Positions 9,496-62,135 of a stretch of DNA of 64,000 nucleotides are shown here, piece after piece. The notes below the pieces were generated by a model, which saw nothing but the letters and a program-made list of their open reading frames with translations, did no database searches and was not told the origin of the DNA. The translations under genes were made by a program, and so were the position numbers. The stretch covers positions 186,001-250,000 of IMG/VR virus record IMGVR_UViG_3300034073_005389; one strand, written 5' to 3'. Within the stretch, counting starts at the first letter, position 1. Every line of letters begins with the position of its first letter.

Positions 9496-9523
9496 ACCAT
9501 AATTTTTTAAAATTATGCGTCAA
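9496..9523 (-). promoter_or_regulatory. sigma70-like promoter TTGACG-N16-TATGGT
   Basis: Read from the minus strand; same geometry as nine other sites. Confidence 0.65.
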
Positions 9524-9531
9524 GAGGGCAG

Positions 9532-9936
9532 TTATTTTAAAAATAGGTTGTATTTTTCTGCAAAAATTTTTTTTAGCTGTTTGTGATTTGGCTTAATCAA
9601 GCCAACTGAATTACCAATTTTAACATTAGATTGTTCCATTGTTCCATATGGAAACTCTATTACTAAGTCACTAAAAGAATTGTCTCCGATAGTAGCAGTA
9701 CTATTAGGAACGCCTTTACAAATTTGTGTAATTTCTCCATTATTACAAAAAACTATGTCTAATGGGCTTGGTGTATTTTTCATCCAGAATTTATTAACTC
9801 TAGGAGATGCATAAACAAAAGACATAATTGGCGGAGGCCAAGGTTGACGCATAAGACCTTTAGCTTGTTCTTGATCAGAAATAGCTAATAAAGTAGGAAA
9901 TATGTACTCTGAAATATAAACATATCCAGTTTCCAT
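9532..9936 (-). CDS. DUF192 family protein
   Basis: QAKGLM R, FWMKNTPSPLDIVF, VIEFPYG, IKIGN pattern. Confidence 0.85.
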   Translation of the reverse strand: METGYVYISEYIFPTLLAISDQEQAKGLMRQPWPPPIMSFVYASPRVNKFWMKNTPSPLDIVFCNNGEITQICKGVPNSTATIGDNSFSDLVIEFPYGTMEQSNVKIGNSVGLIKPNHKQLKKIFAEKYNLFLK

Positions 9937-9938
9937 AA

Positions 9939-11402
9939 TTAATCCTTAGGTCTATATTGTCTAGTTATATGAGTTACTTTATCTCTAGTTTCTCTTTCTA
10001 ATATTCTTCTTCTTTCATCAGGAGAGGCTCCTGGATACAATATTTCATAATATTTACTTTTCATTTGCTTAATTTTATCGTCAATTAAAGCAAAATTACG
10101 AATTAATAAATCTGAATTAAATTCTTTTTCTAATGCATCCATGGATTCATCAATCAATGAATTGGCTTCATCGGATAATTGAATTAGCTCTACGCTAACA
10201 GCCACTCTTAAAGCTTCACTAGAATCTTCGGTGGTAAAGGTTGCTACTGATAATAAGTTATTAACTTTATTTTGATCGTCAAAAACATTATTTTCGTCTG
10301 GATTATTACTTAAATCCTCTTCGTCTTGTTGCTCTTCTTCTTTTGCTTTACTTTCTTCTACATTACGTTTAAGCCTCTCAAATGCATTAACTACGTTTTG
10401 AACTAAAACTTTGTCAGATTTATCATCAGCTTCACTAAATATGTTAATACTCTTAAGAAGTCTGTTATATAGTTTTCTTAATTCTAAGTTACTCAAACTA
10501 GGCGATAAAGCTCTAGCAAGATCGTCTATGTCATGGACAGTTTTTTTGTTTCTGTTTATAACAAGTTCTTTAACCTCATCAGGGGTGGGTTGATCGATAG
10601 GCGTAGATGAATCTTTGGAGGATGGTGCAGGGGCTGGCGTAGCGACTGGTGTAGCTGCTGGTGTAGCGGCAGGTTCTGTAGTAGGTGGTGGTTTTTCTTT
10701 TTCTTTTTTCTTATCTTGATCTGATTTAGGCTTTGCGGGCTCAGATTGTAAAGACTCTTTAATAGTTTCTAAAGAAACTCCTGAAGCAGCAGCAATTAAA
10801 TTAATTATTGAATTCCAATTTGACTCAATATTTAAAAATATTGATTTAGCATTTTTTACATCTTCTGTTGAAGGAGTGAATCTGTATAAATATCCTTTAC
10901 CTAATTTTCTTTCAAATTTCCTAATATCTCTATATAGTTGAAGCAAAGAATCTAATAAAGACATTCTATAGATGCGTTGCTTCCCGCCTTGCCCCCAACC
11001 AAAAGGACCAAAAGTAGGAGTAAGTAATTTAGTAAAAAATCTAGAAAAAATATTAGAAGCTTCAACAGTTAAAACTCCTTCATAATTTTCAATAGCTGCT
11101 GTTTTTTTCTTTTTTCTATTTTTAGAATAAGAGTCTTGCTCTTGTGTTATTTTTTCTGCTTTTTGAGCAATAGAGTTATACTTATTAGTTAAATTAGAAA
11201 TAATATCAACTGGATTACCAGGAATTGGTTCAATAATTTTAGATTTTTCTTGAAAAAAAACGCTAGGAGAGCCATTTATTAATTTTTTAAAATTAATAAC
11301 ATCATGAATTAATTCTGATACTTCTTTATTCCATTCTTGTTTATTCTGCCTTAGCTGTTCTTGAGCAGGATCAGAAGATGGTTTTCTAGCATATTTATTC
11401 AT
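9939..11402 (-). CDS. hypothetical protein with Pro/Ala/Thr linker and acidic tract (possible virion protein)
   Basis: 487-aa helical ORF; GAGG SD. Confidence 0.6.
   Translation of the reverse strand: MNKYARKPSSDPAQEQLRQNKQEWNKEVSELIHDVINFKKLINGSPSVFFQEKSKIIEPIPGNPVDIISNLTNKYNSIAQKAEKITQEQDSYSKNRKKKKTAAIENYEGVLTVEASNIFSRFFTKLLTPTFGPFGWGQGGKQRIYRMSLLDSLLQLYRDIRKFERKLGKGYLYRFTPSTEDVKNAKSIFLNIESNWNSIINLIAAASGVSLETIKESLQSEPAKPKSDQDKKKEKEKPPPTTEPAATPAATPVATPAPAPSSKDSSTPIDQPTPDEVKELVINRNKKTVHDIDDLARALSPSLSNLELRKLYNRLLKSINIFSEADDKSDKVLVQNVVNAFERLKRNVEESKAKEEEQQDEEDLSNNPDENNVFDDQNKVNNLLSVATFTTEDSSEALRVAVSVELIQLSDEANSLIDESMDALEKEFNSDLLIRNFALIDDKIKQMKSKYYEILYPGASPDERRRILERETRDKVTHITRQYRPKD
10636..10671. 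repeat. imperfect 12-bp tandem repeat x3 (coding AATP/VATP linker)
   Basis: ggcgtagcgact ggtgtagctgct ggtgtagcggca. Confidence 0.7.
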
Positions 11403-11429
11403 ACCTCAATAACATTTTATTGACTGATT

Positions 11430-12017
11430 TCAGATAATCTGGTCAATTAAACCATACTGCAAAGCTTGCTTAGCATCCATCCAAACATCTTGCTTACAAT
11501 CTTCTTTTAGTTTTTCTAGTGGATGACCTGTATGCTGAGCTAAAATTTTCATAATATTATCATTATTTTCTTTAATAAAATCATAATAATTTTTTGAATT
11601 TATAATATCTTGACCTGGTAAAGGAAATGCGAACTGAATACCATGAATCATGATTTTGGATGACTTCATAGCATATCTTTCTCCTTTTGCTCCGGCAGCC
11701 AAAATAACTGCACCGGCAGAATAAGCTTTACCGGCACATATTGTTTTAACTGGAGCTGAAATCATCTGCATTACATCATAAATATTAGCTAATCCAGCGG
11801 CATCTCCACCATTTGAATGTATATAAATGGTAATTGGTTCTTCATGATTTTCGTTATCATAATAAAGTAATAAGGCAGCTAGTTCGGCAGCACTTTGTTT
11901 AGTAACATCTTCAGATAAGAAGATCATTCTATCTTTAGTTAATCTAATATATGTTTCTGCATACCCGGCTAATGGATTTTTAGCGGCATCATGATCTTGT
12001 AAAGAATGTTTCTTCAT
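11430..12017 (-). CDS. clpP: Clp protease proteolytic subunit, triad intact
   Basis: IHSNGG, KAYSAG (Ser), KIMIHG (His), QDVWM (Asp), YGLIDQI. Confidence 0.92.
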   Translation of the reverse strand: MKKHSLQDHDAAKNPLAGYAETYIRLTKDRMIFLSEDVTKQSAAELAALLLYYDNENHEEPITIYIHSNGGDAAGLANIYDVMQMISAPVKTICAGKAYSAGAVILAAGAKGERYAMKSSKIMIHGIQFAFPLPGQDIINSKNYYDFIKENNDNIMKILAQHTGHPLEKLKEDCKQDVWMDAKQALQYGLIDQII

Positions 12018-12023
12018 AAACCC

Positions 12024-21748: not shown

Positions 21749-22102
21749 TGGTGGAGAATTGGGGAGTCGAACCCCATTCCGCAGAATATTATTATGTAAA
21801 CTCATTCACAAACTTAGCCAGTTTTACATCTCTAGCGATGTCAATAGATTTAGCTCTATTAAGCGATTCACTGTTGTTTTTATTATTAACCTCGTGACCT
21901 GATTAATAACTAACCTTGGTGGTTAAGTGTCTGTAGAATACTAAGGTTATCTCTTCTCAGACACCCAATCAGGCAGCTAGTGCCATTGGAGCAAATGCAT
22001 TATCGTTGGCATTTAAACGTCGATTGCTGGATTAACGGAATGGCAATCATTTCCTGTTTGCATTTACACAACTCTAAACCACGTCGAAACCAAGTATTCC
22101 CC
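21749..22102 (-). ncRNA. ssrA: tmRNA (transfer-messenger RNA), 354 nt
   Basis: Acceptor stem GGGGAAT/ATTCTCC-A-CCA with G3.U wobble, GGTTTCGAC D-region, T-arm TGGGG-TTCGACT-CCCCA, internal tag ORF, encoded CCA. Confidence 0.96.
21969..22010 (-). other. tmRNA tag reading frame ANDNAFAPMALAA*
   Basis: TTTAAAT then GCC AAC GAT AAT GCA TTT GCT CCA ATG GCA CTA GCT GCC TGA. Confidence 0.93.
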
Positions 22103-22181: not shown

Positions 22182-22209
22182 AGCTTATATTTTATAAATA
22201 GCATGTCAA
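22182..22209 (-). promoter_or_regulatory. sigma70-like promoter TTGACA-N16-TAAGCT (tmRNA precursor)
   Basis: ttgaca tgctatttataaaata taagct on the minus strand. Confidence 0.75.
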
Positions 22210-22364
22210 GATCAAGTTATTTTTTAACTTTGGAGGTCAAATGCCAGCCTTGGCAAGAATCACACTTATAAGTGGTTAGGTTAATTAAATTATGATGTGC
22301 AATAATTGCGTCAGCATCTTTTTTAGTATTATATCTTTTTTTATTTGGAAACTCTAAACATTTT

Positions 22365-23147
22365 TTATGTGGCACGGAATAAATCATGTCCTAATCTAAA
22401 AATATTTAATAAAAAAGATTGTTCCTTAGTAAAGATAGGCAAATCATAATTTATAATCCATTTATTTTTCATATTTTCTCCTATTAATTTAGGAGATCGA
22501 TAACAAGCCGCACCTCTTCTAAAAACAGGATGATACTGATTAAAATCAATATTGCATTCTTGCGCTAACAATTCTATTTTTTCTTCAAAAGTTAATCCTT
22601 GAATCATCTCTTTAATAGAATTTTTATCATATTTTTTAATTAACTCATAAAAACAAGCCAATTGAATAGAGGTGTAAAAATTTTGTTGTTGCTTAAATAT
22701 AATAGTATTAACGGCTTCTGAAATAGAAGGTACATTAAAAACTCTAGAATGAAAGTGAGATTCGCCCAATAAATTTAAATCAGAGTTTTCAATATTCTTA
22801 TTGAATTCTAAAGTGGCTATAGAACTAGTGATAGAAGTTAATTTTTGAACTTTATTATCCAGCCAAGGACTAGTATCTGCAGATTGATCATTTCTAGCCA
22901 CAATTACAATTTCATCATTGTGATGATAAGCAAAAATAGCCCCCTCAATTTCAGAACATAATTTTAAGGCAGTGGTTAGCATATATTCTGAAAATTTTTC
23001 AGAATAAGGCTTATCTAATATAGATGTAGTCTTATTAAATGACCTACCATTAACTACTATAATTATTGGTAATTTATTTAATAGTTTCGCATCAGATTGG
23101 TCTTGATAAGAATCAATCCGATCTTTTAATTTAAGATTATTCATCAC
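22365..23147 (-). CDS. tRNA-His guanylyltransferase Thg1-like protein, first catalytic Asp replaced
   Basis: VVNGRSF (vs RxDGxxF), YHHNDEI, WLDNKVQK..S..SS.AT..FN, FHSRVF. Confidence 0.8.
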   Translation of the reverse strand: MMNNLKLKDRIDSYQDQSDAKLLNKLPIIIVVNGRSFNKTTSILDKPYSEKFSEYMLTTALKLCSEIEGAIFAYHHNDEIVIVARNDQSADTSPWLDNKVQKLTSITSSIATLEFNKNIENSDLNLLGESHFHSRVFNVPSISEAVNTIIFKQQQNFYTSIQLACFYELIKKYDKNSIKEMIQGLTFEEKIELLAQECNIDFNQYHPVFRRGAACYRSPKLIGENMKNKWIINYDLPIFTKEQSFLLNIFRLGHDLFRAT

Positions 23148-23799: not shown

Positions 23800-24393
23800 A
23801 TGATTACTTTTATTATACCTACAATAAATAGAAATACTTTAAATAGATCAATTGATTGTTTATTATCTCAATATAACCCAAATTGGAAAGCAATTGTAGC
23901 TTTTGATGGTTTACCTGCCTTACATTTTCCAGACCCTAGAATTACTTCAATTAGTGTGCCTAAAACAGGAAAATTGAACCATGCAGGTAATGTAAGAAAT
24001 ATTGCTATTTCCAAAGCTGATACAGACTGGGTAGCTTTTCTTGATGATGATGATACTATTTCTAATGATTATGTAGATAGGTTAGTAGAAGAAACAAAAG
24101 AAAATCCAGAAGCTAAATGTATTATATTTAGAATGAAAACCTCATTTGACCCCGTTGGTATTTTACCAGAACCAAATCATAATACATTTTATAAGTGCAG
24201 GGTAGGGATTAGTTTTGCAATAAAAAAAGAAATAAATATAAACTTTGAACCATCTCACATAGAAGACTTTATTATTTTAAATAAAATAAGAGAAAATGGT
24301 CATAAAATAATTATTTCTCCTTATGTTACTTACTTTGTAAGAGAAAATCCTTGCCCAATGCCAGCCTTTAAAAGAGTTAAAATTAACTATTAA
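23800..24393 (+). CDS. GT2-like glycosyltransferase (GT-A fold)
   Basis: FIIPTINR..L.RSIDCL..Q, GNVRNIAI, WVAFLDDDD, EDF. Confidence 0.85.
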   Translation: MITFIIPTINRNTLNRSIDCLLSQYNPNWKAIVAFDGLPALHFPDPRITSISVPKTGKLNHAGNVRNIAISKADTDWVAFLDDDDTISNDYVDRLVEETKENPEAKCIIFRMKTSFDPVGILPEPNHNTFYKCRVGISFAIKKEININFEPSHIEDFIILNKIRENGHKIIISPYVTYFVRENPCPMPAFKRVKINY

Positions 24394-25331
24394 TAATTTT
24401 CTCTATACCAATCAATAGTTTTAATTAAGCCTTGTGTTAAAGAAGTTTCTGCAGTAAAATTTAGTAATTGTTTTGCCCTAGAAACATCCAATAAGCGTTT
24501 TGGCTGACCATCAGATACTTCTCCAGTAAAGATAATTTGACCTTTAAAATCAGTCAATTCTGCTATTAGATAAGCTAAATCTTTAATAGAGATATCAACA
24601 CCAGTTCCTATATTAATAGGAAGTTCTGTGTCTAATTTTTGCTCTACAGCTTGTAATATGGCTTTAGCACAATCTTCTGCATAAAGAAACTCTCTAGTAG
24701 CATTTCCAGTGCCCCAACAAAATACTTGAGGTCTATTTTCTTTTACTGCTGTAACAAACTTATTAATTAAAGCAGGTATTACATGGCTATTTTCTAAATC
24801 AAAATGATCATGAATCCCGTACATATTCACTGGTATTAAATGAGCCCCTTTTGTTTGATATTGCTGCTTCATAGATTGAAACAATAACATCATTGTTTTT
24901 TTAGCGAGACCATATCCAGAATTCGTTTCTTCTGGAAAGCCTTCCCATAAACTATCTTCTTTAAATGGCGCGGGGCAGTATTTAGGATATCCACAAACAG
25001 AACCTAAAGTATAAACATATTCTACTTTATGTTCTAGACACTGTTCTAAAACATTAGAGTTCATTTGTAGATTAAATAAGGTTAAATCAGCGGGTTGTCT
25101 TTGATTTAATCCTATTCCTCCGCATTTAGCAGCAGCATGAATTACTATGTTTGGCTTAATTAAATTAAATAATTGCTCACATTCGCTTTGCTTTTCTAAG
25201 CGATAAAATTTTTTATTATAAGTTTGTCCAACAAAATACAAATCATATTTGTATTGGTAAGGCATAAATACTTTTTGAAGATTTTTGCCTAAAAATCCAG
25301 TGCCGCCAGTAATTAAAACTTTTTCTTTCAT
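24390..25331 (-). CDS. fcl: GDP-L-fucose synthase
   Basis: ITGGTGFLG, AAKCGGIG, EETNSGYGLAK, PVNMYG, SHVIPALI, WGTG..TREFLY. Confidence 0.95.
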   Translation of the reverse strand: MKEKVLITGGTGFLGKNLQKVFMPYQYKYDLYFVGQTYNKKFYRLEKQSECEQLFNLIKPNIVIHAAAKCGGIGLNQRQPADLTLFNLQMNSNVLEQCLEHKVEYVYTLGSVCGYPKYCPAPFKEDSLWEGFPEETNSGYGLAKKTMMLLFQSMKQQYQTKGAHLIPVNMYGIHDHFDLENSHVIPALINKFVTAVKENRPQVFCWGTGNATREFLYAEDCAKAILQAVEQKLDTELPINIGTGVDISIKDLAYLIAELTDFKGQIIFTGEVSDGQPKRLLDVSRAKQLLNFTAETSLTQGLIKTIDWYRENY

Positions 25332-25337
25332 AATATT

Positions 25338-26327: not shown

Positions 26328-26344
26328 TGATTATTCCTATAAAT

Positions 26345-27235: not shown

Positions 27236-27249
27236 ATTTTTTATGTAAT

Positions 27250-27501
27250 TTATTTGCCATACATTTTAGTAGATCCTTGCTTATATAATTTTTGCAATTC
27301 TCCGGTACTACAAATATGGTTAATTTTTTCATCAATCTCTTGAATTAAGTCATTTCTTTGTTGATTGGCAATATTTGTTAATTTTGTGGCATCTGCGATT
27401 TGTTTATCAGAAGCGCTTTTATCCCTCTTTATATCTTCTGCCATCCAAATTCTAATATTTACTACTGTTAGTTTATCAATTAAATTGCCTATTGTATCCA
27501 T
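27250..27501 (-). CDS. small DUF4254-like helical protein, copy 1
   Basis: TIGNLIDKL...W..ED..R...NQQRNDLIQEID...KMY. Confidence 0.55.
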   Translation of the reverse strand: MDTIGNLIDKLTVVNIRIWMAEDIKRDKSASDKQIADATKLTNIANQQRNDLIQEIDEKINHICSTGELQKLYKQGSTKMYGK

Positions 27502-37983: not shown

Positions 37984-37984
37984 T

Positions 37985-46624: not shown

Positions 46625-46652
46625 AGTATATTATTTATAAAATAAAAGTCAA
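46625..46652 (-). promoter_or_regulatory. sigma70-like promoter TTGACT-N16-TATACT
   Basis: Upstream of the rIIA-like gene. Confidence 0.8.
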
Positions 46653-46680
46653 CCCTCTGCTATTTTAAAATAGCAGGGGG
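46653..46680. terminator. probable terminator hairpin
   Basis: 20-bp perfect palindrome ctgctattttaaaatagcag flanked by ccct/gggg, downstream of the VWA gene; U-tract weak. Confidence 0.5.
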
Positions 46681-46827: not shown

Positions 46828-48489
46828 TTATCCTCTAAGTGAAAAGACTCTGCCAAAGGGGGCGACGAAATCTAATCCAGAGGTAATTAGCCAAATAGTA
46901 TCTACTCCTGGGTTTTTCATTTCTACTAAATCTGATTCTAGTAGATATCCATCAGTAATAATAATCAAAAAGTCACATCTGCCGATATTAGTTTCATAGT
47001 TACTGAAAAACTCAGCATATCTTGTTCCTCCTCTACCTAATATTTTTACTTTAGATAAGTTTTCCACATCACATTTTTTGATTTTAGTGGCTTTATCCCA
47101 ATAAATATTGCTATCAGCGGGAACAATTGTGCCCTCAGATCTTTCATCTAAAGACGCTAATTGTGATAGTCCAAAAGCAATATCGTCTTTACTCATAGAG
47201 CCTGACGTATCTAACAAGCATCCAAAATGAGCATAATAGTTTTTACGCTTTGGAACTAATAGTCCAGAAAACATAGGTCTGGTTTTAAACTTAGTCCAGT
47301 CATTTTTTCCATTACCGCTACGTGCTTTAAGAATTCTTGTCCTAATGATATCTTGCCAAGTAACTTTAGGTGCAGTAAGCATTCCTAACTCATCTTCTAG
47401 TCCAGCTGGTACAACTCCTGCCATTTTTTTAGCAGCTTCCATAGCGTCAGAAATGCGCTTTGCCAGCTTTTCTTCCGACTCTTCTGTATCCATGTGCTCA
47501 TCTACAGTGCCACCCAATCCAAACACATCTACTCCTCCACCACAATGACCACATCCTTCTCCAGATTTATGGTTATTGCAATTACATGGCTTACCATCTC
47601 CGTGGTCATGTGATGAATTTTGATCACCTTGAGCTTGCTGATCATCTTGAGCTTGCTGATCATCTTGATTTTGCTGATCTGACTGATCAGGATTGTCTTT
47701 GCCAGATGACTTTTGGTCAGATTTGTTTTTATCTGATTTGTTTTTAGGATCGTAAACGCCTACTCTACCACACTCTGGGCATTTTGGCAATAAGCTATAC
47801 AAATAATCATAAATTTTCTCAGGTCTTTTCATATCTTCTTCCAAATCAGGATCTGCAAAGAAGAATGTAGCCTTTTTTTCACGACGCTCTAACTCTTGTT
47901 GTTCTTCTGGAGTTAGCTCTCGATCTTCATTTGGAGCAGGCAAAGAAACATTGCTTGGTTTATCTGCCGGATCTAAGTCTTCAAATCCTTTAATTTTTGC
48001 AAAAGGATTTTTAATCAATTCAGCATACTCAGACAATGTCATGAATCTGCCAAGATGATCTTTAAAATGCTTTTTAGCATCCATATTGCGCGCTTTAAAA
48101 TCATCCATAACAGTGCCATTTACAATATAATCTACGGCAATGTTCCAAAGTTTGGGCAACCTTGAACCACGACGCTGGGGATGCATATATAAAGCATGCC
48201 AAGCTTCATGACCACAAATAATTCTTAGACCAATTTTAGTTTGCTTTAACACAAACTTAGGATTCCAATAGAATCTTTTACCATCAGTAGCTGCTGTTGG
48301 AATACTAAGAGTACAAATATGTTCTACAGGATAGAGCAAGGAGAAAATCAAAGGATCTCCTCCCATTCCGGTTCCCACATGACGATTATCGTACTTTACT
48401 CCTAAGTCTAGGAAAACTTGCGAAAGTTTCTCCTCTGCTTGCATTACTAAACTAGGGCTAATTGTTCCCATTACTTTGGTAAATTTCAT
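46828..48489 (-). CDS. DUF2201-like metallopeptidase plus VWA domain protein (MoxR partner)
   Basis: PTAATDG, HEAWH (HExxH), WNIAVDY.VN, LDTSGSMS MIDAS, GRGGT, IITDG. Confidence 0.88.
   Translation of the reverse strand: MKFTKVMGTISPSLVMQAEEKLSQVFLDLGVKYDNRHVGTGMGGDPLIFSLLYPVEHICTLSIPTAATDGKRFYWNPKFVLKQTKIGLRIICGHEAWHALYMHPQRRGSRLPKLWNIAVDYIVNGTVMDDFKARNMDAKKHFKDHLGRFMTLSEYAELIKNPFAKIKGFEDLDPADKPSNVSLPAPNEDRELTPEEQQELERREKKATFFFADPDLEEDMKRPEKIYDYLYSLLPKCPECGRVGVYDPKNKSDKNKSDQKSSGKDNPDQSDQQNQDDQQAQDDQQAQGDQNSSHDHGDGKPCNCNNHKSGEGCGHCGGGVDVFGLGGTVDEHMDTEESEEKLAKRISDAMEAAKKMAGVVPAGLEDELGMLTAPKVTWQDIIRTRILKARSGNGKNDWTKFKTRPMFSGLLVPKRKNYYAHFGCLLDTSGSMSKDDIAFGLSQLASLDERSEGTIVPADSNIYWDKATKIKKCDVENLSKVKILGRGGTRYAEFFSNYETNIGRCDFLIIITDGYLLESDLVEMKNPGVDTIWLITSGLDFVAPFGRVFSLRG
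47621..47679. repeat. 18-bp tandem repeat x3.3 (QDDQQA linker)
   Basis: tgatcaccttgagcttgc tgatcatcttgagcttgc tgatcatcttgattttgc tgatc. Confidence 0.85.
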
Positions 48490-48511
48490 TTAATTCTCCG
48501 AAATTTATATA

Positions 48512-49639
48512 TCACTTACCAACAACTTGCTCTTTGATTTTATTAAGAAGAGGCTCCCATTCTGGTTGCTCATCCAAATCAAACCTAATAATACGATCTA
48601 GCTGAATCTGGCTGCGTACCGCTACCAATACCGTTTCATAAGAAACTTTTTGTAAGAAGTTTCCTACGTGCTTGACAGACGCTGGAACCTTACCTTCTTT
48701 AGAATTATCAAGCTGTGTAGCAAGTCTGGCACAAGTAATCATACATGCCACTAGTTTCTTGGTAGGCTCTAATGCATTATATTTAGAGGTCACATCTTTG
48801 CCATCAAACACTTCTTCAATCATAGGAAGAAGCTGTTGATAATGCTCATAGTAATTGCTATACTTGATGCCAGCATCTTTACCAATACAGCCACATACTT
48901 TGCGGTTAAGTAGTCCGTAATTCCAGTTAAGAGACTCGCCTTTGTACAAAATCTCAGACGCACGCGCCCACCCACGTGGGGATGGATCGGCATATCGATC
49001 TTCTGGATCAACTGCACCAAACAAATCTTTTGGATGGTCTTGAATATAAGCAGTGATAGAGGGATGAATATGACCTGTTTTACCAGCCCATTCTAGCCAA
49101 GAAGAAGCATCAGCCTCTACTAGATACTTTTCAGCACGGTCTAGTAGTGGTAAGCTGGGACGAGCACCACCTTCTGAAATCAAGTTGCCAGTCATGATAA
49201 TAGCTTTGAGATTAGGCAATTGTCTACCGTTAATAGACTTGAATTGAGTAAACTCAAGAAGCGGAGCCCAAAGGCTTGGATCAGCTTTATCTACTTCGTC
49301 GAGTAGAGCAACAACGCCTTTCTTTCCTTCAAGCATTGGTTCATAAAATTGAGGAAGAAGAAAATCTACAAACTTTTGTTTTTGAGAGGCTGCCATGATA
49401 TTTGGATAGCCGCCCATATCAACTCTTTCTAGAACTGAAAGATTGATGTATACTTCATGCATTCCGGCTTTCTTAATTTCTTGCTTAGAAATCTCAGTCT
49501 TACCACTGCCTCGACGACCAAAAATAGCTACGTTGCTGCCAACTTGAATTGAAGCAGCGATATGCTCCGATAAATCTTTTGTATTTAGTTTCTCAAGATT
49601 AAAATCAGAAGTCGCCATTGTGTGCTGTTGTGTTGCCAT
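48512..49639 (-). CDS. MoxR-like AAA+ ATPase
   Basis: GRRGSGKT, LLDEVDKA, MTGN, LLDR, SPRGW. Confidence 0.88.
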   Translation of the reverse strand: MATQQHTMATSDFNLEKLNTKDLSEHIAASIQVGSNVAIFGRRGSGKTEISKQEIKKAGMHEVYINLSVLERVDMGGYPNIMAASQKQKFVDFLLPQFYEPMLEGKKGVVALLDEVDKADPSLWAPLLEFTQFKSINGRQLPNLKAIIMTGNLISEGGARPSLPLLDRAEKYLVEADASSWLEWAGKTGHIHPSITAYIQDHPKDLFGAVDPEDRYADPSPRGWARASEILYKGESLNWNYGLLNRKVCGCIGKDAGIKYSNYYEHYQQLLPMIEEVFDGKDVTSKYNALEPTKKLVACMITCARLATQLDNSKEGKVPASVKHVGNFLQKVSYETVLVAVRSQIQLDRIIRFDLDEQPEWEPLLNKIKEQVVGK

Positions 49640-49677: not shown

Positions 49678-49705
49678 AATATCATTCTTATAAATTGGGT
49701 GTCAA
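49678..49705 (-). promoter_or_regulatory. sigma70-like promoter TTGACA-N16-GATATT
   Basis: Perfect -35, weaker -10, upstream of the MoxR gene. Confidence 0.6.
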
Positions 49706-49728
49706 GAGGGAGACAATTTTAAAAATTG

Positions 49729-51684: not shown

Positions 51685-51712
51685 ACTTTATATTTTATAA
51701 AAAGACTGTCAA
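51685..51712 (-). promoter_or_regulatory. sigma70-like promoter TTGACA-N16-TAAAGT
   Basis: ttgaca gtctttttataaaata taaagt. Confidence 0.75.
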
Positions 51713-51737
51713 GAGCCTGATAATTTATAAAATTAAC

Positions 51738-55792: not shown

Positions 55793-57673
55793 CTACTTAA
55801 TCAATGAAAGAAAGTCTTCTTCCGATATTAGCTTGCAACCTAGTTTACGAGCAGCTACTGCCTTAGAACTAGTGCTGTTCACATCTGCAATCAATAAATG
55901 AGAACATGTCTTATTCACAGCCGACTTATACTCTCCTCCATGATCCATAATCATTTTCTCTAGTTCCGCTCGCTTTAGATTGGTAGATCCTGTAATAGCA
56001 ATCTTGCACCCACTTAACTTACCTTGTACTTTTTCCTTGATCTTAATACCATTTTGCAATAAATCACTAATTAGTTCTTTATTTTTCTGCAAACCAATTC
56101 TAAGAGAAGCCGCCTTAGATGGACCTACTCCATTAATCTGCTCAAAGCTCTCAGCTGTAGTTTGAAAAAACTGGTTTAAACTACCATATCCGTCACTCAT
56201 AATCGCTTTAATAGTGCTAGCACCAATCATAGGAATTGATAAAGCGCCCAAAAAAGTCTCTAATGGAATTTCTACATTGCTCCATAACATTTGATGACAT
56301 TTAGTAGCTGACTTTTTACCCATTCTTTCAATCTGTGACAAATCATCTACAGACAATTTATATAAATCTGCCACAGTTTTGACTTTTCCAGACTCAACTA
56401 ATTTAGTAATTAGTCCATCTCCCCACTCTAAAATATTTAACTCTTTAATCCAATTGCGAATACGACCAGAGACTTGGGCTGGACAGTCCATAGTATTAGT
56501 GCATTGCAAATATTCTCCATTTTCCATAGTAGGAGCCCCACATTCAGGGCAATGTGTAGGAGGGTCAAATACTGTACCAGTAGAAGATACTACTTCCTGT
56601 ACATAAGGAATTACATCATTACTACGGCAAACCAATACCTTTGCGCCAACATCAATTCCTAAAGCTGCAATGTTAGAAAAGTTATGCAAACTAGCCTTTT
56701 CTACCTCTGCACCCATTAATTGTACTTTAGGGCTAAATACTGCTACTGGAGTAATACGACCTGAATTACCCACCTGATTCATAATTTGAGCAACATAAGC
56801 CTCACGAGCTACTGAATCAAACTTAATAGCAATAGACCCTTTAGGGCGATTATTCACTATCCCAAAAGAATCTAACTTCACTAAGTCATTTTGATGAGCT
56901 ACTAATCCATCCATATCATATGGATACAAATCTCGTAAAGAAGATTGATATTTGTTTTTTAGTTCTAAGATTTCTGCATTAGAAGTTAACAAATAACTAA
57001 CTGGAGCAGTTAAACCAAGATTGGTTAACTCTTCAAATTGCTGTTGCTGAGAAGTAATATCTACATCATCAGTAAAAATTTGATATACTAATACATCAAG
57101 ATACTGACAACCTTCTCCATCATATCTTCTAGAAATACCAGAAGCAGCATTTCTAGCATTAGAATAATCGGCAAAATATTTTTTATGATTGTCTTTTGAT
57201 AAGACAATTTCTCCACGAATAGTGGCAGAAACTTTCTTCCTTAATCGTAATGGTACGCCATTCATTTTAGCTACGTTAGGAGTGATTAATTCTCCGATTT
57301 CGCCAGAGCCTCTGGTGGCAGCTTTAACTAAAATTCCATTTTCATACATCAAAGAAACAGATAATCCATCTAATTTGGTAGTAACAAAGATTTTGTCATT
57401 TTTGTGAATATGATCGGTTGACCATTTGACAAATTCTTCATGAGTTTGACATTTATTTAAGCTGCCCATGGGATAAACATGCTGAAATTTTTCCCAATTA
57501 GACACTGGCTCATAACCAATACTAGTTACAGCTAGATTTTTAGGATCTAAAACTGATAATTCGTCTACCCAAGCATCATAAACTTGATCGCTAACTGTGG
57601 AAGTGTGATTATAATAATCATTTCTAGCTTTTAAAATGCTCTTTTCTAACTCTTTAATACGATCAAGTGACAT
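55793..57673 (-). CDS. ligA: NAD-dependent DNA ligase
   Basis: KLDG adenylation motif, ATRGSG, IRGE, DGLV, C4 Zn finger, HhH, BRCT; start trimmed to MSLDRIK at 57673. Confidence 0.97.
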   Translation of the reverse strand: MSLDRIKELEKSILKARNDYYNHTSTVSDQVYDAWVDELSVLDPKNLAVTSIGYEPVSNWEKFQHVYPMGSLNKCQTHEEFVKWSTDHIHKNDKIFVTTKLDGLSVSLMYENGILVKAATRGSGEIGELITPNVAKMNGVPLRLRKKVSATIRGEIVLSKDNHKKYFADYSNARNAASGISRRYDGEGCQYLDVLVYQIFTDDVDITSQQQQFEELTNLGLTAPVSYLLTSNAEILELKNKYQSSLRDLYPYDMDGLVAHQNDLVKLDSFGIVNNRPKGSIAIKFDSVAREAYVAQIMNQVGNSGRITPVAVFSPKVQLMGAEVEKASLHNFSNIAALGIDVGAKVLVCRSNDVIPYVQEVVSSTGTVFDPPTHCPECGAPTMENGEYLQCTNTMDCPAQVSGRIRNWIKELNILEWGDGLITKLVESGKVKTVADLYKLSVDDLSQIERMGKKSATKCHQMLWSNVEIPLETFLGALSIPMIGASTIKAIMSDGYGSLNQFFQTTAESFEQINGVGPSKAASLRIGLQKNKELISDLLQNGIKIKEKVQGKLSGCKIAITGSTNLKRAELEKMIMDHGGEYKSAVNKTCSHLLIADVNSTSSKAVAARKLGCKLISEEDFLSLIK

Positions 57674-57723
57674 TTTATATCCTTTTATTTGCTTGAGTAA
57701 ATTCAAAGCAGGTAAAACACAAC

Positions 57724-57757
57724 AAGCCAGATATTGTAAAAATACGATATCTGGCTT
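57724..57757 (-). terminator. hairpin just after a promoter (terminator/attenuator or 5' stabiliser)
   Basis: aagccagatat...atatctggctt 11-bp perfect arms followed by GTTGTGTTTT on the minus strand. Confidence 0.55.
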
Positions 57758-57764
57758 ACTAACA

Positions 57765-57792
57765 AGTGTATATTTTACAAATTACACGTCAA
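57765..57792 (-). promoter_or_regulatory. sigma70-like promoter TTGACG-N16-TACACT
   Basis: ttgacg tgtaatttgtaaaata tacact. Confidence 0.75.
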
Positions 57793-57805
57793 GTAGAGCG
57801 TAATT

Positions 57806-58387
57806 TTATTTTTTAGAGGGCGTGGCACGCTTCTTGCTAGTAGCAGCTTCGGGCTCTTGCTTCAATATTATAAATGGAGGTGCTACGCCTGCGCTGAACT
57901 CTGCGGCAGCCTCCAAAGCCATTGTTATACGTTCCTCTGGCTTTAGTTTAAGCTTGGCTGTACTGTGCAGCGAGCCGAGTGCTAGGTCAGAGCCGCAACC
58001 TACTGCATCATAATTTACACTTGGAATACCTACTTGATGATCTTTCTCTATTGTATAAAGTTTGCCTTTATATCCTACTAAGAAATTTCCGCCAGTAGTT
58101 GCTTCTTTATCTCCAAAACCATTAACAGAAAAACATTTTCGAATACTATCAATAAAATCTGTGACCATATATTGGTAATCATCTTGGCTAACAGTTTGTT
58201 TGGGAGGGTCAAACTTGAACCTAAGCAATTGACCCATACGAAAGCTTTGAGTGAAACCCAAAAGAAAAGGTCCATTTGTGAAAACTTTAGGATCTTTACG
58301 AATAGTAATAGATAGTCCGGCAATTCCTGCGCTATCTGCGCCCATATAAACAGTATCATTCTCTACTACAGCAACTACGCATGTCAT
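57806..58387 (-). CDS. HslV/proteasome beta-subunit-like Ntn-hydrolase (Thr protease)
   Basis: M-T-C-V-V start exposing Thr1, GADS, KVF, GCGSDLALGSL, ALEAA...S.GV. Confidence 0.8.
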   Translation of the reverse strand: MTCVVAVVENDTVYMGADSAGIAGLSITIRKDPKVFTNGPFLLGFTQSFRMGQLLRFKFDPPKQTVSQDDYQYMVTDFIDSIRKCFSVNGFGDKEATTGGNFLVGYKGKLYTIEKDHQVGIPSVNYDAVGCGSDLALGSLHSTAKLKLKPEERITMALEAAAEFSAGVAPPFIILKQEPEAATSKKRATPSKK

Positions 58388-58399: not shown

Positions 58400-58690
58400 T
58401 TATAATTCAATATGTGAATGTTGTAATTTCATTACATCTCGCTTCATCAGCCAAGATTCTCTGCCCCGTTGTTGATTGCAAGGTGCACAGGCTAAATCAA
58501 TATTAGTAATGTCATTAGTTCCTCCCCAAGAAAGAGGAACTACATGTTCTATAGTTAGATTTTCTACTAGAAAAGCTTTATTACAATAGCAACAAATATC
58601 AATTAATTTATCTTTTAAAATTGATTTTTTAAATTTATTGTTAATTCGTAATTGCTGTCTTCTAGTTCTTCTACGCTGCAATTTTGCCAT
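58400..58690 (-). CDS. HNH endonuclease
   Basis: CCYC, TIEHVVPLSWGGTNDITNIDLACAPCNQQRG. Confidence 0.9.
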   Translation of the reverse strand: MAKLQRRRTRRQQLRINNKFKKSILKDKLIDICCYCNKAFLVENLTIEHVVPLSWGGTNDITNIDLACAPCNQQRGRESWLMKRDVMKLQHSHIEL

Positions 58691-58713: not shown

Positions 58714-58741
58714 ACTATACAATTTTTAAAATACAAGTCAA
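58714..58741 (-). promoter_or_regulatory. sigma70-like promoter TTGACT-N16-TATAGT
   Basis: Upstream of the HNH gene. Confidence 0.75.
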
Positions 58742-58751
58742 CTAGCTTAAT

Positions 58752-59288
58752 TTATAAAAATATTTTTAATTTATCAGGCAGGTACAAGTGAAAATTAGGA
58801 TGACCTTTATACAAAAGCGGATTATATTCTGTGGAATTACTAGTAAGATGACTATTTAAATCATTTAAAAAATTAAAATATTCTTCTGAATTTTTTTCAA
58901 AAAATCTATGACCTGTAAATTTGTATTTTAAAGACCGACAAATAGACAAATCACACATTTTATTATTAATAATAAATAAATCATTTAAATTTGTATGCTG
59001 ACAAAAATCAATTAAATCTGGAGCAATTCTATTATAGACTAAATCTGATATTTTAGGTAAATCAGATTCAGAATCAGCAATAGTGGGAAAACATTCCTCC
59101 ATAATAAATTTTGGTAATTCTTCGGGATCTAATAAAACACCTTTATCAATAATAATAGCCCACCACATCCCTGTATCTAAATAATACAAAGACTTATTAG
59201 ATCTGTTAGCAGCGCAATAATTAGAAATAACCTGGTCCTTAGGTAAGAGATTTATTCCTTTTTTAGACTTAAAATATCTTTTAGACAT
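58752..59288 (-). CDS. hypothetical protein
   Basis: 178-aa ORF. Confidence 0.55.
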   Translation of the reverse strand: MSKRYFKSKKGINLLPKDQVISNYCAANRSNKSLYYLDTGMWWAIIIDKGVLLDPEELPKFIMEECFPTIADSESDLPKISDLVYNRIAPDLIDFCQHTNLNDLFIINNKMCDLSICRSLKYKFTGHRFFEKNSEEYFNFLNDLNSHLTSNSTEYNPLLYKGHPNFHLYLPDKLKIFL

Positions 59289-59473: not shown

Positions 59474-59692
59474 TTAGTTTTGACCATCTTCCACATTGTT
59501 TTTATAGCTTCCGCCACGGCGCTTTCTCTTACAATATTGTTTTTGGCTAAACCCTTTGGGGTTACTACAATTTATTTTTTTCTTAAACTTTACACTCCAA
59601 CGACGTTTCATGCCTTTTCTTGGCTTATTATAATCTTCTGCCAATTTAACAAATTTTTCTGCTAATTCCAAGATGGCATCTACGTCCAACAT
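59474..59692 (-). CDS. small basic Cys-pair phage protein
   Basis: WSVKFKKKINCSNPKGFSQKQYC motif; AGGAG SD. Confidence 0.7.
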   Translation of the reverse strand: MLDVDAILELAEKFVKLAEDYNKPRKGMKRRWSVKFKKKINCSNPKGFSQKQYCKRKRRGGSYKNNVEDGQN

Positions 59693-59716: not shown

Positions 59717-59744
59717 ATTATTAGCTAATCAAAATAAGTGTCAA
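59717..59744 (-). promoter_or_regulatory. sigma70-like promoter TTGACA-N16-AATAAT
   Basis: Upstream of 59474..59692. Confidence 0.6.
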
Positions 59745-59758
59745 AAGAAGTTTTCATA

Positions 59759-60328
59759 TTATTTTAATTTGGCTATTCTGATTAAATCAGAAGACTTTAG
59801 CATACGATCATCATTAGTATGCTCCTCTGGTTCTAAATGAACTTCCACTGAACTTGGTGGAGGTGGTGGGCAAAAAGAAGCAGATTTTTTATCTGATGTT
59901 AAGGATTGTGGTGCAGAACCATACATATTCTTTTTATAATTTTTTAATTCATAATATGTTTCTCTTACCATTTCAGCAATTGAAGGTCCATCATCATTAC
60001 TATATGCAAATTCTTTTAAAGCATTTGACTCATAGATAAAAGTAATTAGTTCTTTCATCTTATTTTTAAAGATGACTAATTGCTCAACTTCTTTTAAGAC
60101 GCCATCTATACTAAAATGCTGCTCATCTTCTGGATCTACAATTTTTGTAAATTGAGCTTTTACATCTGCTCTGCCTTCAGATCTGCCAGAATTATAAACA
60201 GGACCATCTACTTTATTTTCTGACCTAAGGCGATCAATTTCTTCTAATAACTCTTTTACATAAGAAATTGCTACATATTCATTATTTTCGACGGCAATTC
60301 TAACCTCTTCCTCATCTTCTGGCAACAT
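59759..60328 (-). CDS. hypothetical protein
   Basis: 189-aa ORF, GGAG SD. Confidence 0.6.
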   Translation of the reverse strand: MLPEDEEEVRIAVENNEYVAISYVKELLEEIDRLRSENKVDGPVYNSGRSEGRADVKAQFTKIVDPEDEQHFSIDGVLKEVEQLVIFKNKMKELITFIYESNALKEFAYSNDDGPSIAEMVRETYYELKNYKKNMYGSAPQSLTSDKKSASFCPPPPPSSVEVHLEPEEHTNDDRMLKSSDLIRIAKLK

Positions 60329-60940: not shown

Positions 60941-60942
60941 AA

Positions 60943-61329
60943 TTACCTCTTATCAAAAGCTCCACAATTACACTGATGCCAATCTTGCCACCAACTACAA
61001 TTAATAGGATGATCTTCTTTGTATTCTACATTACTGATTTCAGAATCTAAGAATTCATCATGCTGATATTCCCAAATCATATCTTTGATTATTTTTTTCA
61101 TTTCATGGGCGCCTTCTCTACGACCAATTTGTCGCATAGAAAGGCAATCTTGTTGATGTTTTTTCATCCACCAATCACGTTCTTCTGTCATATTTCTGAG
61201 GTCACGTTCTAGATTAATAACTCTAGTAGAGAATTCTTTAGAAGAAGGGTCCATACAAGGAGTAGATGAGTCTTTACTCAGACAATATACACAACGACCA
61301 TCTGAGCCCCAACCAGCATGATTATTCAT
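60943..61329 (-). CDS. hypothetical Cys-rich protein
   Basis: CVYC..C and HPINC..WHQCNCG. Confidence 0.6.
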   Translation of the reverse strand: MNNHAGWGSDGRCVYCLSKDSSTPCMDPSSKEFSTRVINLERDLRNMTEERDWWMKKHQQDCLSMRQIGRREGAHEMKKIIKDMIWEYQHDEFLDSEISNVEYKEDHPINCSWWQDWHQCNCGAFDKR

Positions 61330-61543
61330 TTTTTAATTTATCCTTAGGTACAAGTTCAAAATTAAGACGAAAATATTCAAGCATATAATGAAGATTCTTA
61401 ATATCTTCTGTAGTAGGACAAGAATCTTCTCCGTAACCAGCGGGGCACGCATCAGCAATATCTGCAATGCGGCTTGCCAAATCACAAGCCTTTTCAAGTG
61501 AAGCATCTTTTAGAAAAAAGTGGATTTCAAATTTATTGTGCAT
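61322..61543 (-). CDS. hypothetical protein
   Basis: 73-aa ORF. Confidence 0.5.
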   Translation of the reverse strand: MHNKFEIHFFLKDASLEKACDLASRIADIADACPAGYGEDSCPTTEDIKNLHYMLEYFRLNFELVPKDKLKNE

Positions 61544-61547
61544 TGAT

Positions 61548-61754
61548 TTATGCCTTTTTTATATTCCAAACTTTTTCTGGACTATAATCAATATTAATTT
61601 TTAATAAATTATTTTCAGATCTTTCTTCTGGAATTTGAGAATCTATTTGTTTAATGATCTGATTATAATAATCTGGATCCAGCTCAAACTCCCATAGTTC
61701 TCCAGAGTCATCTTTTACTAAGATTTTTACACCACTCTTTTCAGGGCTCTCCAT
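61548..61754 (-). CDS. hypothetical protein
   Basis: Start trimmed to MESPEK (61754), which has a GGAG SD and removes most of the overlap. Confidence 0.5.
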   Translation of the reverse strand: MESPEKSGVKILVKDDSGELWEFELDPDYYNQIIKQIDSQIPEERSENNLLKINIDYSPEKVWNIKKA

Positions 61755-62100
61755 TATCTCCACATCTCCAACAATACCATGAACCATCTTCGTAATTTTC
61801 TCTGCCATCGCTGTAACAGCAGCCTGGACAAATATTACGAACACTAGATGTTACATTGTCTGATTTTTTGTCTTTTTTATCATCATTCTTCTTCATAAGG
61901 TGAAGAGATAGCGAAGTATGAATTCTTTGATTCAATTCATTACATTCTTTTTCACATTCATCATATGTCCCTTCAAAAGCTTCATAATTTACCATGCCAG
62001 GGACTCTCAAAATTACAAAGTAAAATCTTTGATTTTGTGGAGTTGTAGGCGGATAATCTTTAAAAGGAATAATTTCGTATGGCTTCCAATCGTTTAACAT
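61741..62100 (-). CDS. hypothetical protein with C-terminal Zn ribbon (probably leaderless)
   Basis: CPGC...CWRC; the ATG at 62100 is 8 nt below the -10 box, while the 62106 ATG is too close to it. Confidence 0.55.
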   Translation of the reverse strand: MLNDWKPYEIIPFKDYPPTTPQNQRFYFVILRVPGMVNYEAFEGTYDECEKECNELNQRIHTSLSLHLMKKNDDKKDKKSDNVTSSVRNICPGCCYSDGRENYEDGSWYCWRCGDNGEP

Positions 62101-62107
62101 ACCCATT

Positions 62108-62135
62108 ATTGTAATTATACATAAATTAGTGTCAA
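62108..62135 (-). promoter_or_regulatory. sigma70-like promoter TTGACA-N16-TACAAT
   Basis: ttgaca ctaatttatgtataat tacaat. Confidence 0.8.

What the first reader, a model, noticed from the sequence alone, without database searches (positions are those of the whole stretch)
9496..62135. Ten sigma70-like promoters, all with a 16-bp spacer and often a TTATAAAATA-like block
Seen (minus strand, each 28 nt): 9496 TTGACG/TATGGT, 22182 TTGACA/TAAGCT, 41984 TTGACA/TACAAT, 46625 TTGACT/TATACT, 49678 TTGACA/GATATT, 51685 TTGACA/TAAAGT, 57765 TTGACG/TACACT, 58714 TTGACT/TATAGT, 59717 TTGACA/AATAAT, 62108 TTGACA/TACAAT. Every intergenic minus-strand TTGAC I found fits 16, not 17. The last 10 spacer bases are ttataaaata (twice), ttgtaaaata, ttataaataa and ttataagaat in five of them. 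Known: 17 is the sigma70 optimum; 16-bp spacers characterise E. coli rrn P1 promoters, which respond to supercoiling and DksA/ppGpp. Inference: a dedicated promoter class tuned by the phage's own DksA, TopA and HU proteins, by a spacer-binding activator, or by a host sigma with unusual spacing.
Basis: partly seen in the sequence, partly recalled or inferred. Interest (0 to 1): 0.75.

Follow-up and report, generated by a model that had tools for sequence, protein, structure and literature searches.

The report
Huge-phage early promoters with fixed 16-bp spacer
An uncultivated family of huge freshwater and groundwater phages starts its non-structural genes from one very uniform bacterial-type promoter whose two boxes sit 16 rather than the usual 17 bases apart; this is a real, conserved variant of a known kind of phage promoter.

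Summary
All ten sites are exactly as written. The window lies in a 361-kb metagenomic phage.

- **This genome:** on the coding strand, TTGACN-N16-TAnnnT occurs 29 times, against 4-12 for other spacings.
- **Six related genomes (about 50% protein identity):** 50 intergenic sites have N16, 7 have N17 and 1 has N18. Shuffled sequence gives 1.7 ± 1.2.
- **Control:** the same count on coliphage RB49 peaks at 17 with broad shoulders.
- **Conservation:** promoters at orthologous positions keep the hexamers and the spacing while the spacer sequence changes.

Every promoter has an A/T-only block (AATTTwAAAAwT) 9-21 nt upstream of the -35 box, then a G+C-richer linker and a conserved C before TTGACA. 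The spacer block is a weaker second copy of this, about 30 bp downstream.

These are most likely strong promoters for the host's primary-sigma RNA polymerase, of the UP/-35/-10 type. They drive prereplicative genes and a tmRNA, and are closest to T4-type early promoters.

The proposed link to DksA, TopA and HU is not supported: the discriminators are not GC-rich and the spacers are AT-rich. The host is unknown, so I could not test whether 16 bp is the host's own optimum. No RNA evidence was obtained.

The parts
9496..9544 (-). Promoter: A/T block, linker ccctc, TTGACG, 16-nt spacer, TATGGT. It sits upstream of an FtsK/SpoIIIE-like ATPase (8487-9500). The called ATG lies inside the -10 box, so the true start is probably further downstream.
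22182..22230 (-). Promoter: TTGACA, 16-nt spacer (TGCTATTTATAAAATA), TAAGCT. It lies about 75 nt upstream of the phage tmRNA gene.
21749..22102 (-). tmRNA gene (tag ANDNAFAPMALAA), the stable RNA driven by the promoter at 22182.
   Evidence: ARAGORN; Rfam RF00023, 114 bits
41984..42032 (-). Promoter: TTGACA, 16-nt spacer, TACAAT, upstream of a thioredoxin-like gene (41645-41965). An orthologous promoter with N16 is present in G001, G003 and G004.
   Evidence: (alignment A1)
46625..46673 (-). Promoter: TTGACT, 16-nt spacer, TATACT. Its A/T block sits inside a 10-bp-arm palindrome. It lies upstream of the rIIA-like gene (44459-46576) and purA (43318-44457).
49678..49726 (-). Promoter: TTGACA, 16-nt spacer, GATATT, upstream of the AAA ATPase (48512-49639) and the DUF2201 metallopeptidase/VWA protein (46828-48489). 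Orthologues use N16 in G001, G002 and G005 and N17 in G003.
51685..51733 (-). Promoter: TTGACA, 16-nt spacer (GTCTTTTTATAAAATA), TAAAGT, upstream of an unknown 207-aa gene.
57765..57813 (-). Promoter: TTGACG, 16-nt spacer, TACACT, upstream of the NAD-dependent DNA ligase (55793-57706). A strong hairpin lies in the leader. Orthologues use N16 in G001 and G003 and N17 in G002.
58714..58762 (-). Promoter: TTGACT, 16-nt spacer, TATAGT, upstream of an HNH endonuclease (58400-58690) and an HslV-like peptidase (57806-58387).
59717..59765 (-). Promoter: TTGACA, 16-nt spacer, AATAAT, upstream of small unknown genes (59474-59692 and following). It has the weakest -10 box of the ten.
62108..62156 (-). 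Promoter: TTGACA, 16-nt spacer, TACAAT. An ATG follows within 2-8 nt, so the mRNA may be leaderless or the start may be miscalled.

Best explanation
These are the strong prereplicative (early or delayed-early) promoters of an uncultivated family of huge phages, most likely read by the host RNA polymerase carrying its primary sigma70-type factor.

The architecture is composite and almost invariant:
- an A/T-only T3-A4 block (AATTTwAAAAwT) at about -55 to -44;
- an 8-9 nt linker that is richer in G+C;
- C-TTGACa;
- a 16-bp spacer that in about half the cases carries a second, weaker T3-A4 block about three helical turns downstream of the first;
- tTAnAnT.

Inferred mechanism. The upstream block acts like an UP element for the alpha C-terminal domains. 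Sigma region 4 reads TTGACA and sigma region 2 reads TAnAnT. The A/T-rich spacer makes the promoter easy to deform and independent of negative supercoiling, which suits freshly injected DNA.

Shown here: the motif, its statistics, its position and orientation in front of non-structural genes and stable-RNA genes, and its conservation across genomes that share only about 50% protein identity.

Inferred only: which holoenzyme reads it, the role of the alpha subunit, the timing, and why 16 rather than 17 bp is fixed. My guess for the last point is the geometry preferred by the unknown host's polymerase.
For: - **Sites and statistics:**
- **Control:** the same regex on coliphage RB49 peaks at N17 with 16:17:18 = 8:19:10. 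This matches the N17 published for T4-type early promoters (PMC4122927).
- **Logo of 49 sites:** G+C is 5.6% at -21 to -10 relative to TTGAC, against a 32% background. It is 52% in the linker. C occupies -1 in 32 of 49 sites. G+C is 17.6% at spacer positions 9-19.
- **Family:** G001-G005, L012, L014, L030, L032 and L096 are syntenic relatives, and each larger genome shows the N16 peak.
- **Orthologous promoters** are kept upstream of the thioredoxin-like gene, the AAA ATPase, the ligase, rIIA and one further gene. They mostly use N16 although the spacer sequences are unrelated.
- **Downstream genes** are non-structural or stable RNA: tmRNA, ligase, rIIA, purA, an FtsK-like ATPase, HNH, HslV-like and small unknowns. 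In G001 a tRNA sits at the tmRNA locus.
- **Structural region:** the tail-fibre and terminase region lacks the class, apart from one site before an endonuclease/methylase.
- **Polymerase:** no recognisable RNA polymerase catalytic subunit is encoded.
- **Phage sigma:** in the -35-reading helix it has L and I where primary sigmas have E585 and R588.
- **Literature:** T4 early promoters are UP/-35/TGn/-10 promoters with extra consensus (PMC2988021). The spacer around -18 is sensed by sigma70 R451 (PMC3130263). A/T-rich spacers tolerate relaxation (PMC8695583).
Against: - No transcription start sites or any RNA data: RNA runs hold only 4-8% of the tmRNA words, and the single read-laying run was lost to a filter.
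- The host is unknown, so its own spacing preference is untested.
- The spacing distribution (50:7:1, none at 15) is much narrower than in E. coli or RB49. Such rigidity is more typical of alternative sigma factors.
- The phage does encode a sigma (region 2 plus region 4) and a second protein with a region-4-like helix-turn-helix.
- The A/T block lies 4-6 bp further upstream than the E. coli UP consensus. That position is recalled from memory of Estrem et al. 1998.
- Highly diverged phiKZ-type polymerase subunits could escape the Pfam searches.
Confidence: 0.65

Rival explanations
1. The class is read by host core polymerase carrying the phage-encoded 209-aa sigma (G000 27957-28586). It would then be a middle class, and the rigid 16-bp spacing would reflect a compact sigma with only regions 2 and 4.
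For: A sigma70-family protein with regions 2 and 4 is encoded. The spacing distribution is unusually narrow, and -35 variants matching 5 of 6 positions are not enriched at any spacing, as expected for a stringent alternative sigma.
Against: Its region 4.2 helix reads SRLNCIKII where primary sigmas have TRERIRQIE. The equivalents of E585 and R588, which read the TTGACA box, are lost. In region 2 the W433/W434/Q437 equivalents are H/Y/T. The promoter consensus is the canonical primary-sigma one. The sigma gene's own upstream region lacks the motif, and no other obvious early class was found to express it first.
Confidence: 0.12
2. One reading: a dedicated class tuned by a phage factor. The two phased T3-A4 blocks would be binding sites for a phage HU/IHF-like protein or another spacer-binding factor, or activity would be set by phage DksA and TopA through supercoiling and open-complex stability.
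For: The DksA/TraR-like, two HU/IHF-like and TopA genes are present nearby. Two similar A/T blocks lie about 30-31 bp apart, on one DNA face. The upstream block shows more dyad symmetry than column-shuffled controls: mean arm 4.6 against 3.8 +/- 0.17, and arms of 7 or more in 8 sites against 1.8 expected.
Against: TnAn tracts are palindromic by nature, and the column shuffle is confounded by register shifts. Only 3 of 49 sites extend the symmetry into G/C pairs. The spacer block is absent from many orthologous promoters that still keep N16. The discriminators are not GC-rich, so the rrn P1 logic does not carry over. A/T blocks at these positions are explained more simply by alpha-CTD and sigma contacts (PMC2988021, PMC3130263).
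Confidence: 0.12
3. The repeats matter mainly as recombination cassettes. Like the T4-type PeSL elements, conserved promoter modules would mediate shuffling of small genes, and their uniformity would be kept by gene conversion rather than by selection on transcription.
For: Many sites lie in clusters of small unknown genes. Some have a terminator-like hairpin immediately upstream, for example G000 276349. PeSLs are described as an A/T-rich region plus a sigma70-like promoter plus a stem-loop (PMC4122927).
Against: Upstream hairpins are not a feature of the class (8 of 49; mean z -0.44, P = 0.085). Outside the hexamers and A/T blocks the sequences are not conserved, so there is too little homology for recombination. 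The same promoters stand before conserved core genes at orthologous positions. This reading is compatible with a promoter function rather than opposed to it.
Confidence: 0.05
4. The sites are chance matches in A/T-rich intergenic DNA.
For: A lax sigma70 scan of the window is at shuffle level.
Against: There are 50 observed sites against 1.7 +/- 1.2 in shuffles. The pattern is strand-specific, sits at a fixed distance to start codons, and is conserved at orthologous positions.
Confidence: 0.01

Closest known systems
T4-type early promoters and PeSL cassettes (T4, RB49/phi1, KVP40/nt-1)
   Same: Host sigma70-type -35 and -10 boxes close to consensus, an A/T-rich region upstream of the -35 box, extra conserved positions beyond the hexamers, a location in front of prereplicative and small unknown genes, and sometimes a stem-loop just upstream (PMC2988021; PMC4122927; RB49 control).
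   Different: The published consensus is N17, and RB49 shows 16:17:18 = 8:19:10. Here the ratio is 50:7:1 with N16. There is no TGn extended -10 box. There is a conserved C before TTGACA and a G+C-richer linker. A second T3-A4 block lies inside the spacer. Upstream hairpins are not a feature of the class.
E. coli rrnB P1-type promoters (UP element plus 16-bp spacer)
   Same: An A/T-rich upstream element, a 16-bp spacer, and use for stable-RNA genes (tmRNA here, tRNA in G001).
   Different: rrn P1 has a GC-rich discriminator, a GC-rich spacer and an imperfect -35 box, which make it short-lived and sensitive to DksA/ppGpp (established knowledge, from memory). Here the -35 box is consensus, the spacers are A/T-rich, the discriminators are 38% G+C, and the A/T block sits about 4-6 bp further from the -35 box.
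Alphaproteobacterial primary-sigma consensus (R. etli CTTGAC-N16-23-TATNNT)
   Same: A conserved C immediately 5' of TTGAC, and a TAnnnT-type -10 box (Table 3 of PMC4943231).
   Different: That consensus is lax in spacing (16-23), whereas this class is rigid. Nothing shows that the host is an alphaproteobacterium. The only other hint is that the tmRNA tag resembles alphaproteobacterial tags, and the phage tmRNA is not the permuted type.

Membership tests
Primary-sigma (sigma70-type) -35/-10 promoter | A -35 hexamer close to TTGACA | tested here: met
   TTGAC was the selection criterion. The sixth base is A in 35 of 49 sites. Variants matching 5 of 6 positions are not enriched, so the class really is near-consensus.
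Primary-sigma (sigma70-type) -35/-10 promoter | A -10 hexamer TAnnnT with A at -11 and T at -7 | tested here: met
   The logo reads T 45/49, A 49/49, t, a 30/49, n, T 49/49. A and the final T were part of the selection pattern. The first T, which was left free among T, A and G, is T in 45 of 49 sites.
Primary-sigma (sigma70-type) -35/-10 promoter | A spacer of 17 +/- 1 bp | tested here: met
   16 bp in 50 sites, 17 in 7 and 18 in 1. This is within the range but shifted and much narrower than in E. coli (gap uncertainty 2.3 bits, PMC1807945) or RB49.
Primary-sigma (sigma70-type) -35/-10 promoter | Codirectional with a gene and a short distance upstream of it | tested here: met
   The distance from TTGAC to the start codon is mostly 26-86 nt. 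Enrichment is found on the coding strand only.
Primary-sigma (sigma70-type) -35/-10 promoter | Transcription starts 6-9 nt downstream of the -10 box, and the site is bound by the primary-sigma holoenzyme | not testable with these tools
   No usable RNA runs, and read laying failed.
UP-element promoter | An A/T-rich tract between about -40 and -60 | tested here: met
   An A/T-only block lies at -21 to -10 relative to TTGAC, about -55 to -44 from the start. G+C there is 5.6% against a 32% background.
UP-element promoter | Stimulation that depends on the alpha C-terminal domain | not testable with these tools
   This needs biochemistry.
rrn P1-type stringently controlled promoter | A GC-rich discriminator between the -10 box and +1 | tested here: not met
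   The 6 nt after the -10 box are 38% G+C (113 of 294 cells).
rrn P1-type stringently controlled promoter | A 16-bp spacer | tested here: met
T4-type PeSL (promoter-early stem-loop) cassette | A stem-loop immediately upstream of the promoter | tested here: not met
   Only 8 of 49 sites have z below -1.5. Mean z is -0.44 and Wilcoxon P = 0.085.
T4-type PeSL (promoter-early stem-loop) cassette | A sigma70-like promoter with N17 and an A/T-rich upstream region | tested here: not met
   The A/T-rich upstream region is present, but the spacing is N16, not N17.
Promoter of the phage-encoded sigma factor | A sigma whose DNA-reading residues fit the observed boxes | tested here: inconclusive
   Only the R584 equivalent is kept. 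The E585 and R588 equivalents are L and I. This argues against the phage sigma but does not exclude it.

The most novel reading that the evidence does not exclude
The rigid 16-bp geometry and the two T3-A4 blocks phased three helical turns apart may be more than a host preference. They could be a lineage-specific device: either a phage-encoded factor (the HU/IHF-like proteins, the region-4-like protein, or the compact phage sigma) locks host polymerase onto this architecture, or the architecture is tuned so that promoters fire on relaxed, newly injected DNA. In either case these huge phages would have a private promoter code distinct from their host's.
Probability: 0.15. Interest if true: 0.6.

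Novelty: new variant of a known kind. Interest (0 to 1): 0.4.

Why it matters
The motif gives a precise, testable promoter model for a widespread but uncultivated family of 360-450-kb phages. That allows transcription units and early genes to be annotated in metagenomic huge-phage genomes. The near-exclusive 16-bp spacing contrasts with the N17 of T4-type phages. If the host's own promoters use 16 bp, the motif becomes a new computational clue to the host. If they do not, the phage must carry a way to set polymerase geometry. The composite promoters would also be candidate strong, supercoiling-independent parts for the host clade.

Tried and rejected
- **Near relatives:** GenBank phages hold none, by DNA or by protein. 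A single-protein scan of IMG/VR with rIIA found nothing. Relatives came only from a DNA motif scan.
- **Host identification failed.** No genome encodes the exact tmRNA tag. A relaxed tag pattern found only two alphaproteobacterial MAGs, a Rifle contig labelled Kaiserbacteria (tag differs by one residue, permuted tmRNA) and Ca. Erwinia haradaeae, with no similarity outside the tag. The ESM Atlas search with purA was uninformative. Gmd is too conserved to help, and its best large contigs are further phage relatives.
- **RNA evidence:** metatranscriptomes hold only 4-8% of the tmRNA words.
- **5'-leader hairpins** are not a class feature (mean z -0.3, P = 0.14).
- **Upstream terminator hairpins** are not a class feature either (P = 0.085).
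- **Dyad symmetry of the upstream block** exceeds a column-shuffle control. I judge that control to be confounded, because TnAn tracts are palindromic by nature.
- **A crisp late-promoter motif** for the structural genes could not be defined by k-mer contrasts. There is only a tendency towards TATATAA and TATAAATA boxes.
- **The generic promoter scan** is at chance level in this A/T-rich DNA.
- **Broader motif scans** of the public collections were judged too unspecific to run.

Full report
**Context.** The window is bases 186001-250000 of a single 361,490-bp IMG/VR virus record. The record is 33% G+C and the window 29.7%. About 87% of its genes lie on the minus strand. Public runs that hold the sequence are DNA metagenomes from subsurface, freshwater and lake samples. 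GenBank phages contain no near relative. The best protein hits are rIIA-like genes at 37% identity or less. No RNA polymerase catalytic subunit is recognisable.

**The observation.** All ten 28-nt strings are present as written, on the minus strand, with a 16-nt spacer. The five quoted spacer endings are correct.

Across the whole genome, the minus strand has 29 matches to TTGACN-N16-TAnnnT, against 4-12 for every other spacing from 12 to 22. The mostly non-coding plus strand is flat, with 10 at N16. Eleven more members lie outside the window. They include some whose spacers are not A/T-rich yet are still 16 nt long.

**Relatives and pooled statistics.** A motif scan of IMG/VR recovered contigs that proved to be syntenic relatives at about 50% median protein identity:
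- G001, 447,763 bp and complete;
- G002 to G005, which are fragments;
- the loci L012, L014, L030 and L032, and later L096.

Each of the larger genomes shows the same peak at 16 on its coding strand. Pooled results are as follows.
- 45 of 97 intergenic, codirectional TTGAC have TAnnnT at exactly 16. Nine are at 17 and ten at 18 (P about 1e-36).
- Nine of the ten matches at 18 are the same sites counted twice.
- In 540 intergenic segments there are 50 sites at N16, against 1.7 +/- 1.2 (maximum 5) in 200 dinucleotide-preserving shuffles. There are 7 at N17.
- Boxes that match TTGACA at only 5 of 6 positions are not enriched at any spacing.

As a control, the same expression applied to the early 50 kb of coliphage RB49 gives 8, 19 and 10 sites at 16, 17 and 18. 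This agrees with the N17 published for T4-type early promoters (PMC4122927). The 16-bp peak is therefore neither chance nor a product of the method. It is also much narrower than in E. coli, where the gap uncertainty is 2.3 bits (PMC1807945).

| Element | Position relative to the first T of TTGAC | Finding |
|---|---|---|
| Upstream A/T block | -21 to -10 | Almost free of G and C (33 of 588 cells, 5.6%, against a 32% intergenic background). Consensus AATTTwAAAAwT. |
| Linker | -8 to -1 | 52% G+C. |
| Base before the -35 box | -1 | C in 32 of 49 sites. |
| Spacer | +9 to +19 | Carries wwTTTwwAAaa at 17.6% G+C. |
| Base before the -10 box | +21 | T in 36 of 49 sites. |
| -10 box | +22 to +27 | Reads T-A-t-a-n-T. 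|

All ten window sites have the upstream block. The T and A tracts of the two blocks lie 30-31 bp apart. The upstream block is the more universal of the two. Many orthologous promoters lack the spacer block yet keep N16. The six bases after the -10 box are 38% G+C, so they are not a GC-rich discriminator.

**Conservation.** Orthologous genes in the relatives carry a promoter at the same place.
- The thioredoxin-like gene downstream of 41984 has N16 in all four genomes that contain it. In alignment A1 the C-TTGAC box, several spacer positions and the TA...T box are invariant, with no indel between the boxes.
- The AAA ATPase gene has N16 in four genomes and N17 in one, with unrelated spacer sequences.
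- The ligase and rIIA genes behave in the same way.
- In G001, two tRNA-Thr genes and two amber-suppressor tRNAs occupy the locus where this phage has its tmRNA. A TTGAC-N16 promoter precedes them.

**What the promoters drive.** In the window the downstream genes are an FtsK-like ATPase, the tmRNA, a thioredoxin-like protein, rIIA and purA, an AAA ATPase with a DUF2201/VWA protein, the NAD-dependent ligase, an HNH endonuclease with an HslV-like peptidase, and small unknown genes. The region with tail-fibre and terminase genes lacks the class, except before an endonuclease/methylase. This pattern fits a prereplicative class.

**Who reads them.** The consensus is the canonical one for primary sigma factors. 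The phage encodes a 209-aa sigma with regions 2 and 4. Aligned to solved primary sigmas, its -35-reading helix has L and I where E585 and R588 stand, and its region 2 differs at the W433, W434 and Q437 equivalents. By the known structure of region 4 bound to -35 DNA (Campbell et al. 2002, recalled from memory), this argues against it reading TTGACA. The argument is not proof. The rigidity of the spacing is the main point in favour of a compact sigma. I put host primary-sigma holoenzyme at about 0.65.

TopA, a DksA/TraR-family protein and two HU/IHF-like proteins are indeed encoded in the window. However, the properties that make rrn P1 responsive to DksA and supercoiling are absent: there is no GC-rich discriminator, no GC-rich spacer and no imperfect -35 box. 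In E. coli promoter libraries, spacer length has only a minor effect on supercoiling sensitivity, 16-bp spacers are as strong as 17-bp ones, and A/T-rich spacers tolerate or even prefer relaxed DNA (PMC8695583). Sigma70 also senses the spacer near -18 through R451, with T or A favoured (PMC3130263). A simpler reading follows. The upstream block is UP-like, and the spacer block raises strength and makes firing independent of template topology. That is a sensible property for DNA that has just been injected. This reading is inference.

**Comparison with known systems.** T4-type early promoters, described as UP/-35/TGn/-10 promoters with extra consensus (PMC2988021), and PeSL cassettes are the closest known systems. 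The differences are the N16 spacing, the absence of TGn, the C before TTGACA, the G+C-richer linker and the second A/T block. Hairpins upstream or in the leader are not features of the class.

**Limits.** The host was not identified. The key refuting test, whether the host's own promoters use 16 bp, could therefore not be run. No RNA data could be laid on the sequence.

**Verdict.** The promoter class is real, conserved and lineage-wide. It is a new variant of a known kind, and the reason for its fixed 16-bp spacing is unresolved.

Noticed in passing
window 21749-22102 (-): The phage encodes a one-piece tmRNA (Rfam, 114 bits) with tag ANDNAFAPMALAA. Among the six related genomes only this one has it. 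G001 carries two tRNA-Thr genes and two tRNA(CTA) amber suppressors at the same locus. The nearest tags in bacterial genomes differ by one to three residues.
   Followed up: partly
window about 24390-40447 (-): A low-G+C island (25-28%) of sugar-nucleotide and glycan genes: GDP-mannose 4,6-dehydratase, an epimerase/reductase, a C-methyltransferase, a DegT aminotransferase, glycosyltransferases and an 820-aa double methyltransferase. There is no TTGACA-N16 promoter between 41984 and 22209, so it may be one transcription unit of about 19 kb. A similar island occurs in relatives (L096, L097, L098).
   Followed up: partly
outside the window: G000 330718-361490 (G+C 46-57%): About 40 copies of GTTGACCGATGG on the plus strand. 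Read on the coding strand this is ACCCATCGGTCAAC, then yTGCAyAAC, then TrnAnGTGAG. One copy stands before almost every small ORF and is usually preceded by a GC hairpin. This looks like a second, very uniform promoter-like class. It is absent from G001-G005. IMG/VR labels the record 'provirus', perhaps because of this region.
   Followed up: partly
outside the window: G000 27957-28586 (-) and 157130-157570 (-): A phage-encoded sigma70-family protein (209 aa, regions 2 and 4) lies next to a ribonucleotide reductase small subunit. A separate 146-aa protein has a sigma region-4/LuxR-type helix-turn-helix. Their target promoters are unknown.
   Followed up: partly
window 62106-62135 and 9496-9501 (-): At two promoters the called start codon lies inside the -10 box or within 2 nt of it. 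Either the starts are miscalled or the mRNAs are leaderless: at 62108 an ATG sits 8 nt after the -10 box.
   Followed up: no
window 57715-57760 (-): The ligase leader folds into an 11-12-bp hairpin (-18.8 kcal/mol, z = -7) starting a few nt after the predicted start. It could be a stabilising or regulatory 5' structure. This is not a general feature of the class.
   Followed up: partly
window 22365-23147 (-): The syntenic genes in close relatives (L098, L096) carry the Thg1 (tRNA-His guanylyltransferase) Pfam domain. The window ORF is probably the same, and it lies next to the tmRNA gene.
   Followed up: no
window 46828-49639 (-): An AAA ATPase and a DUF2201 metallopeptidase/VWA protein form the most conserved gene pair in the family (75-82% identity). 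They are expressed from the promoter at 49678.
   Followed up: no
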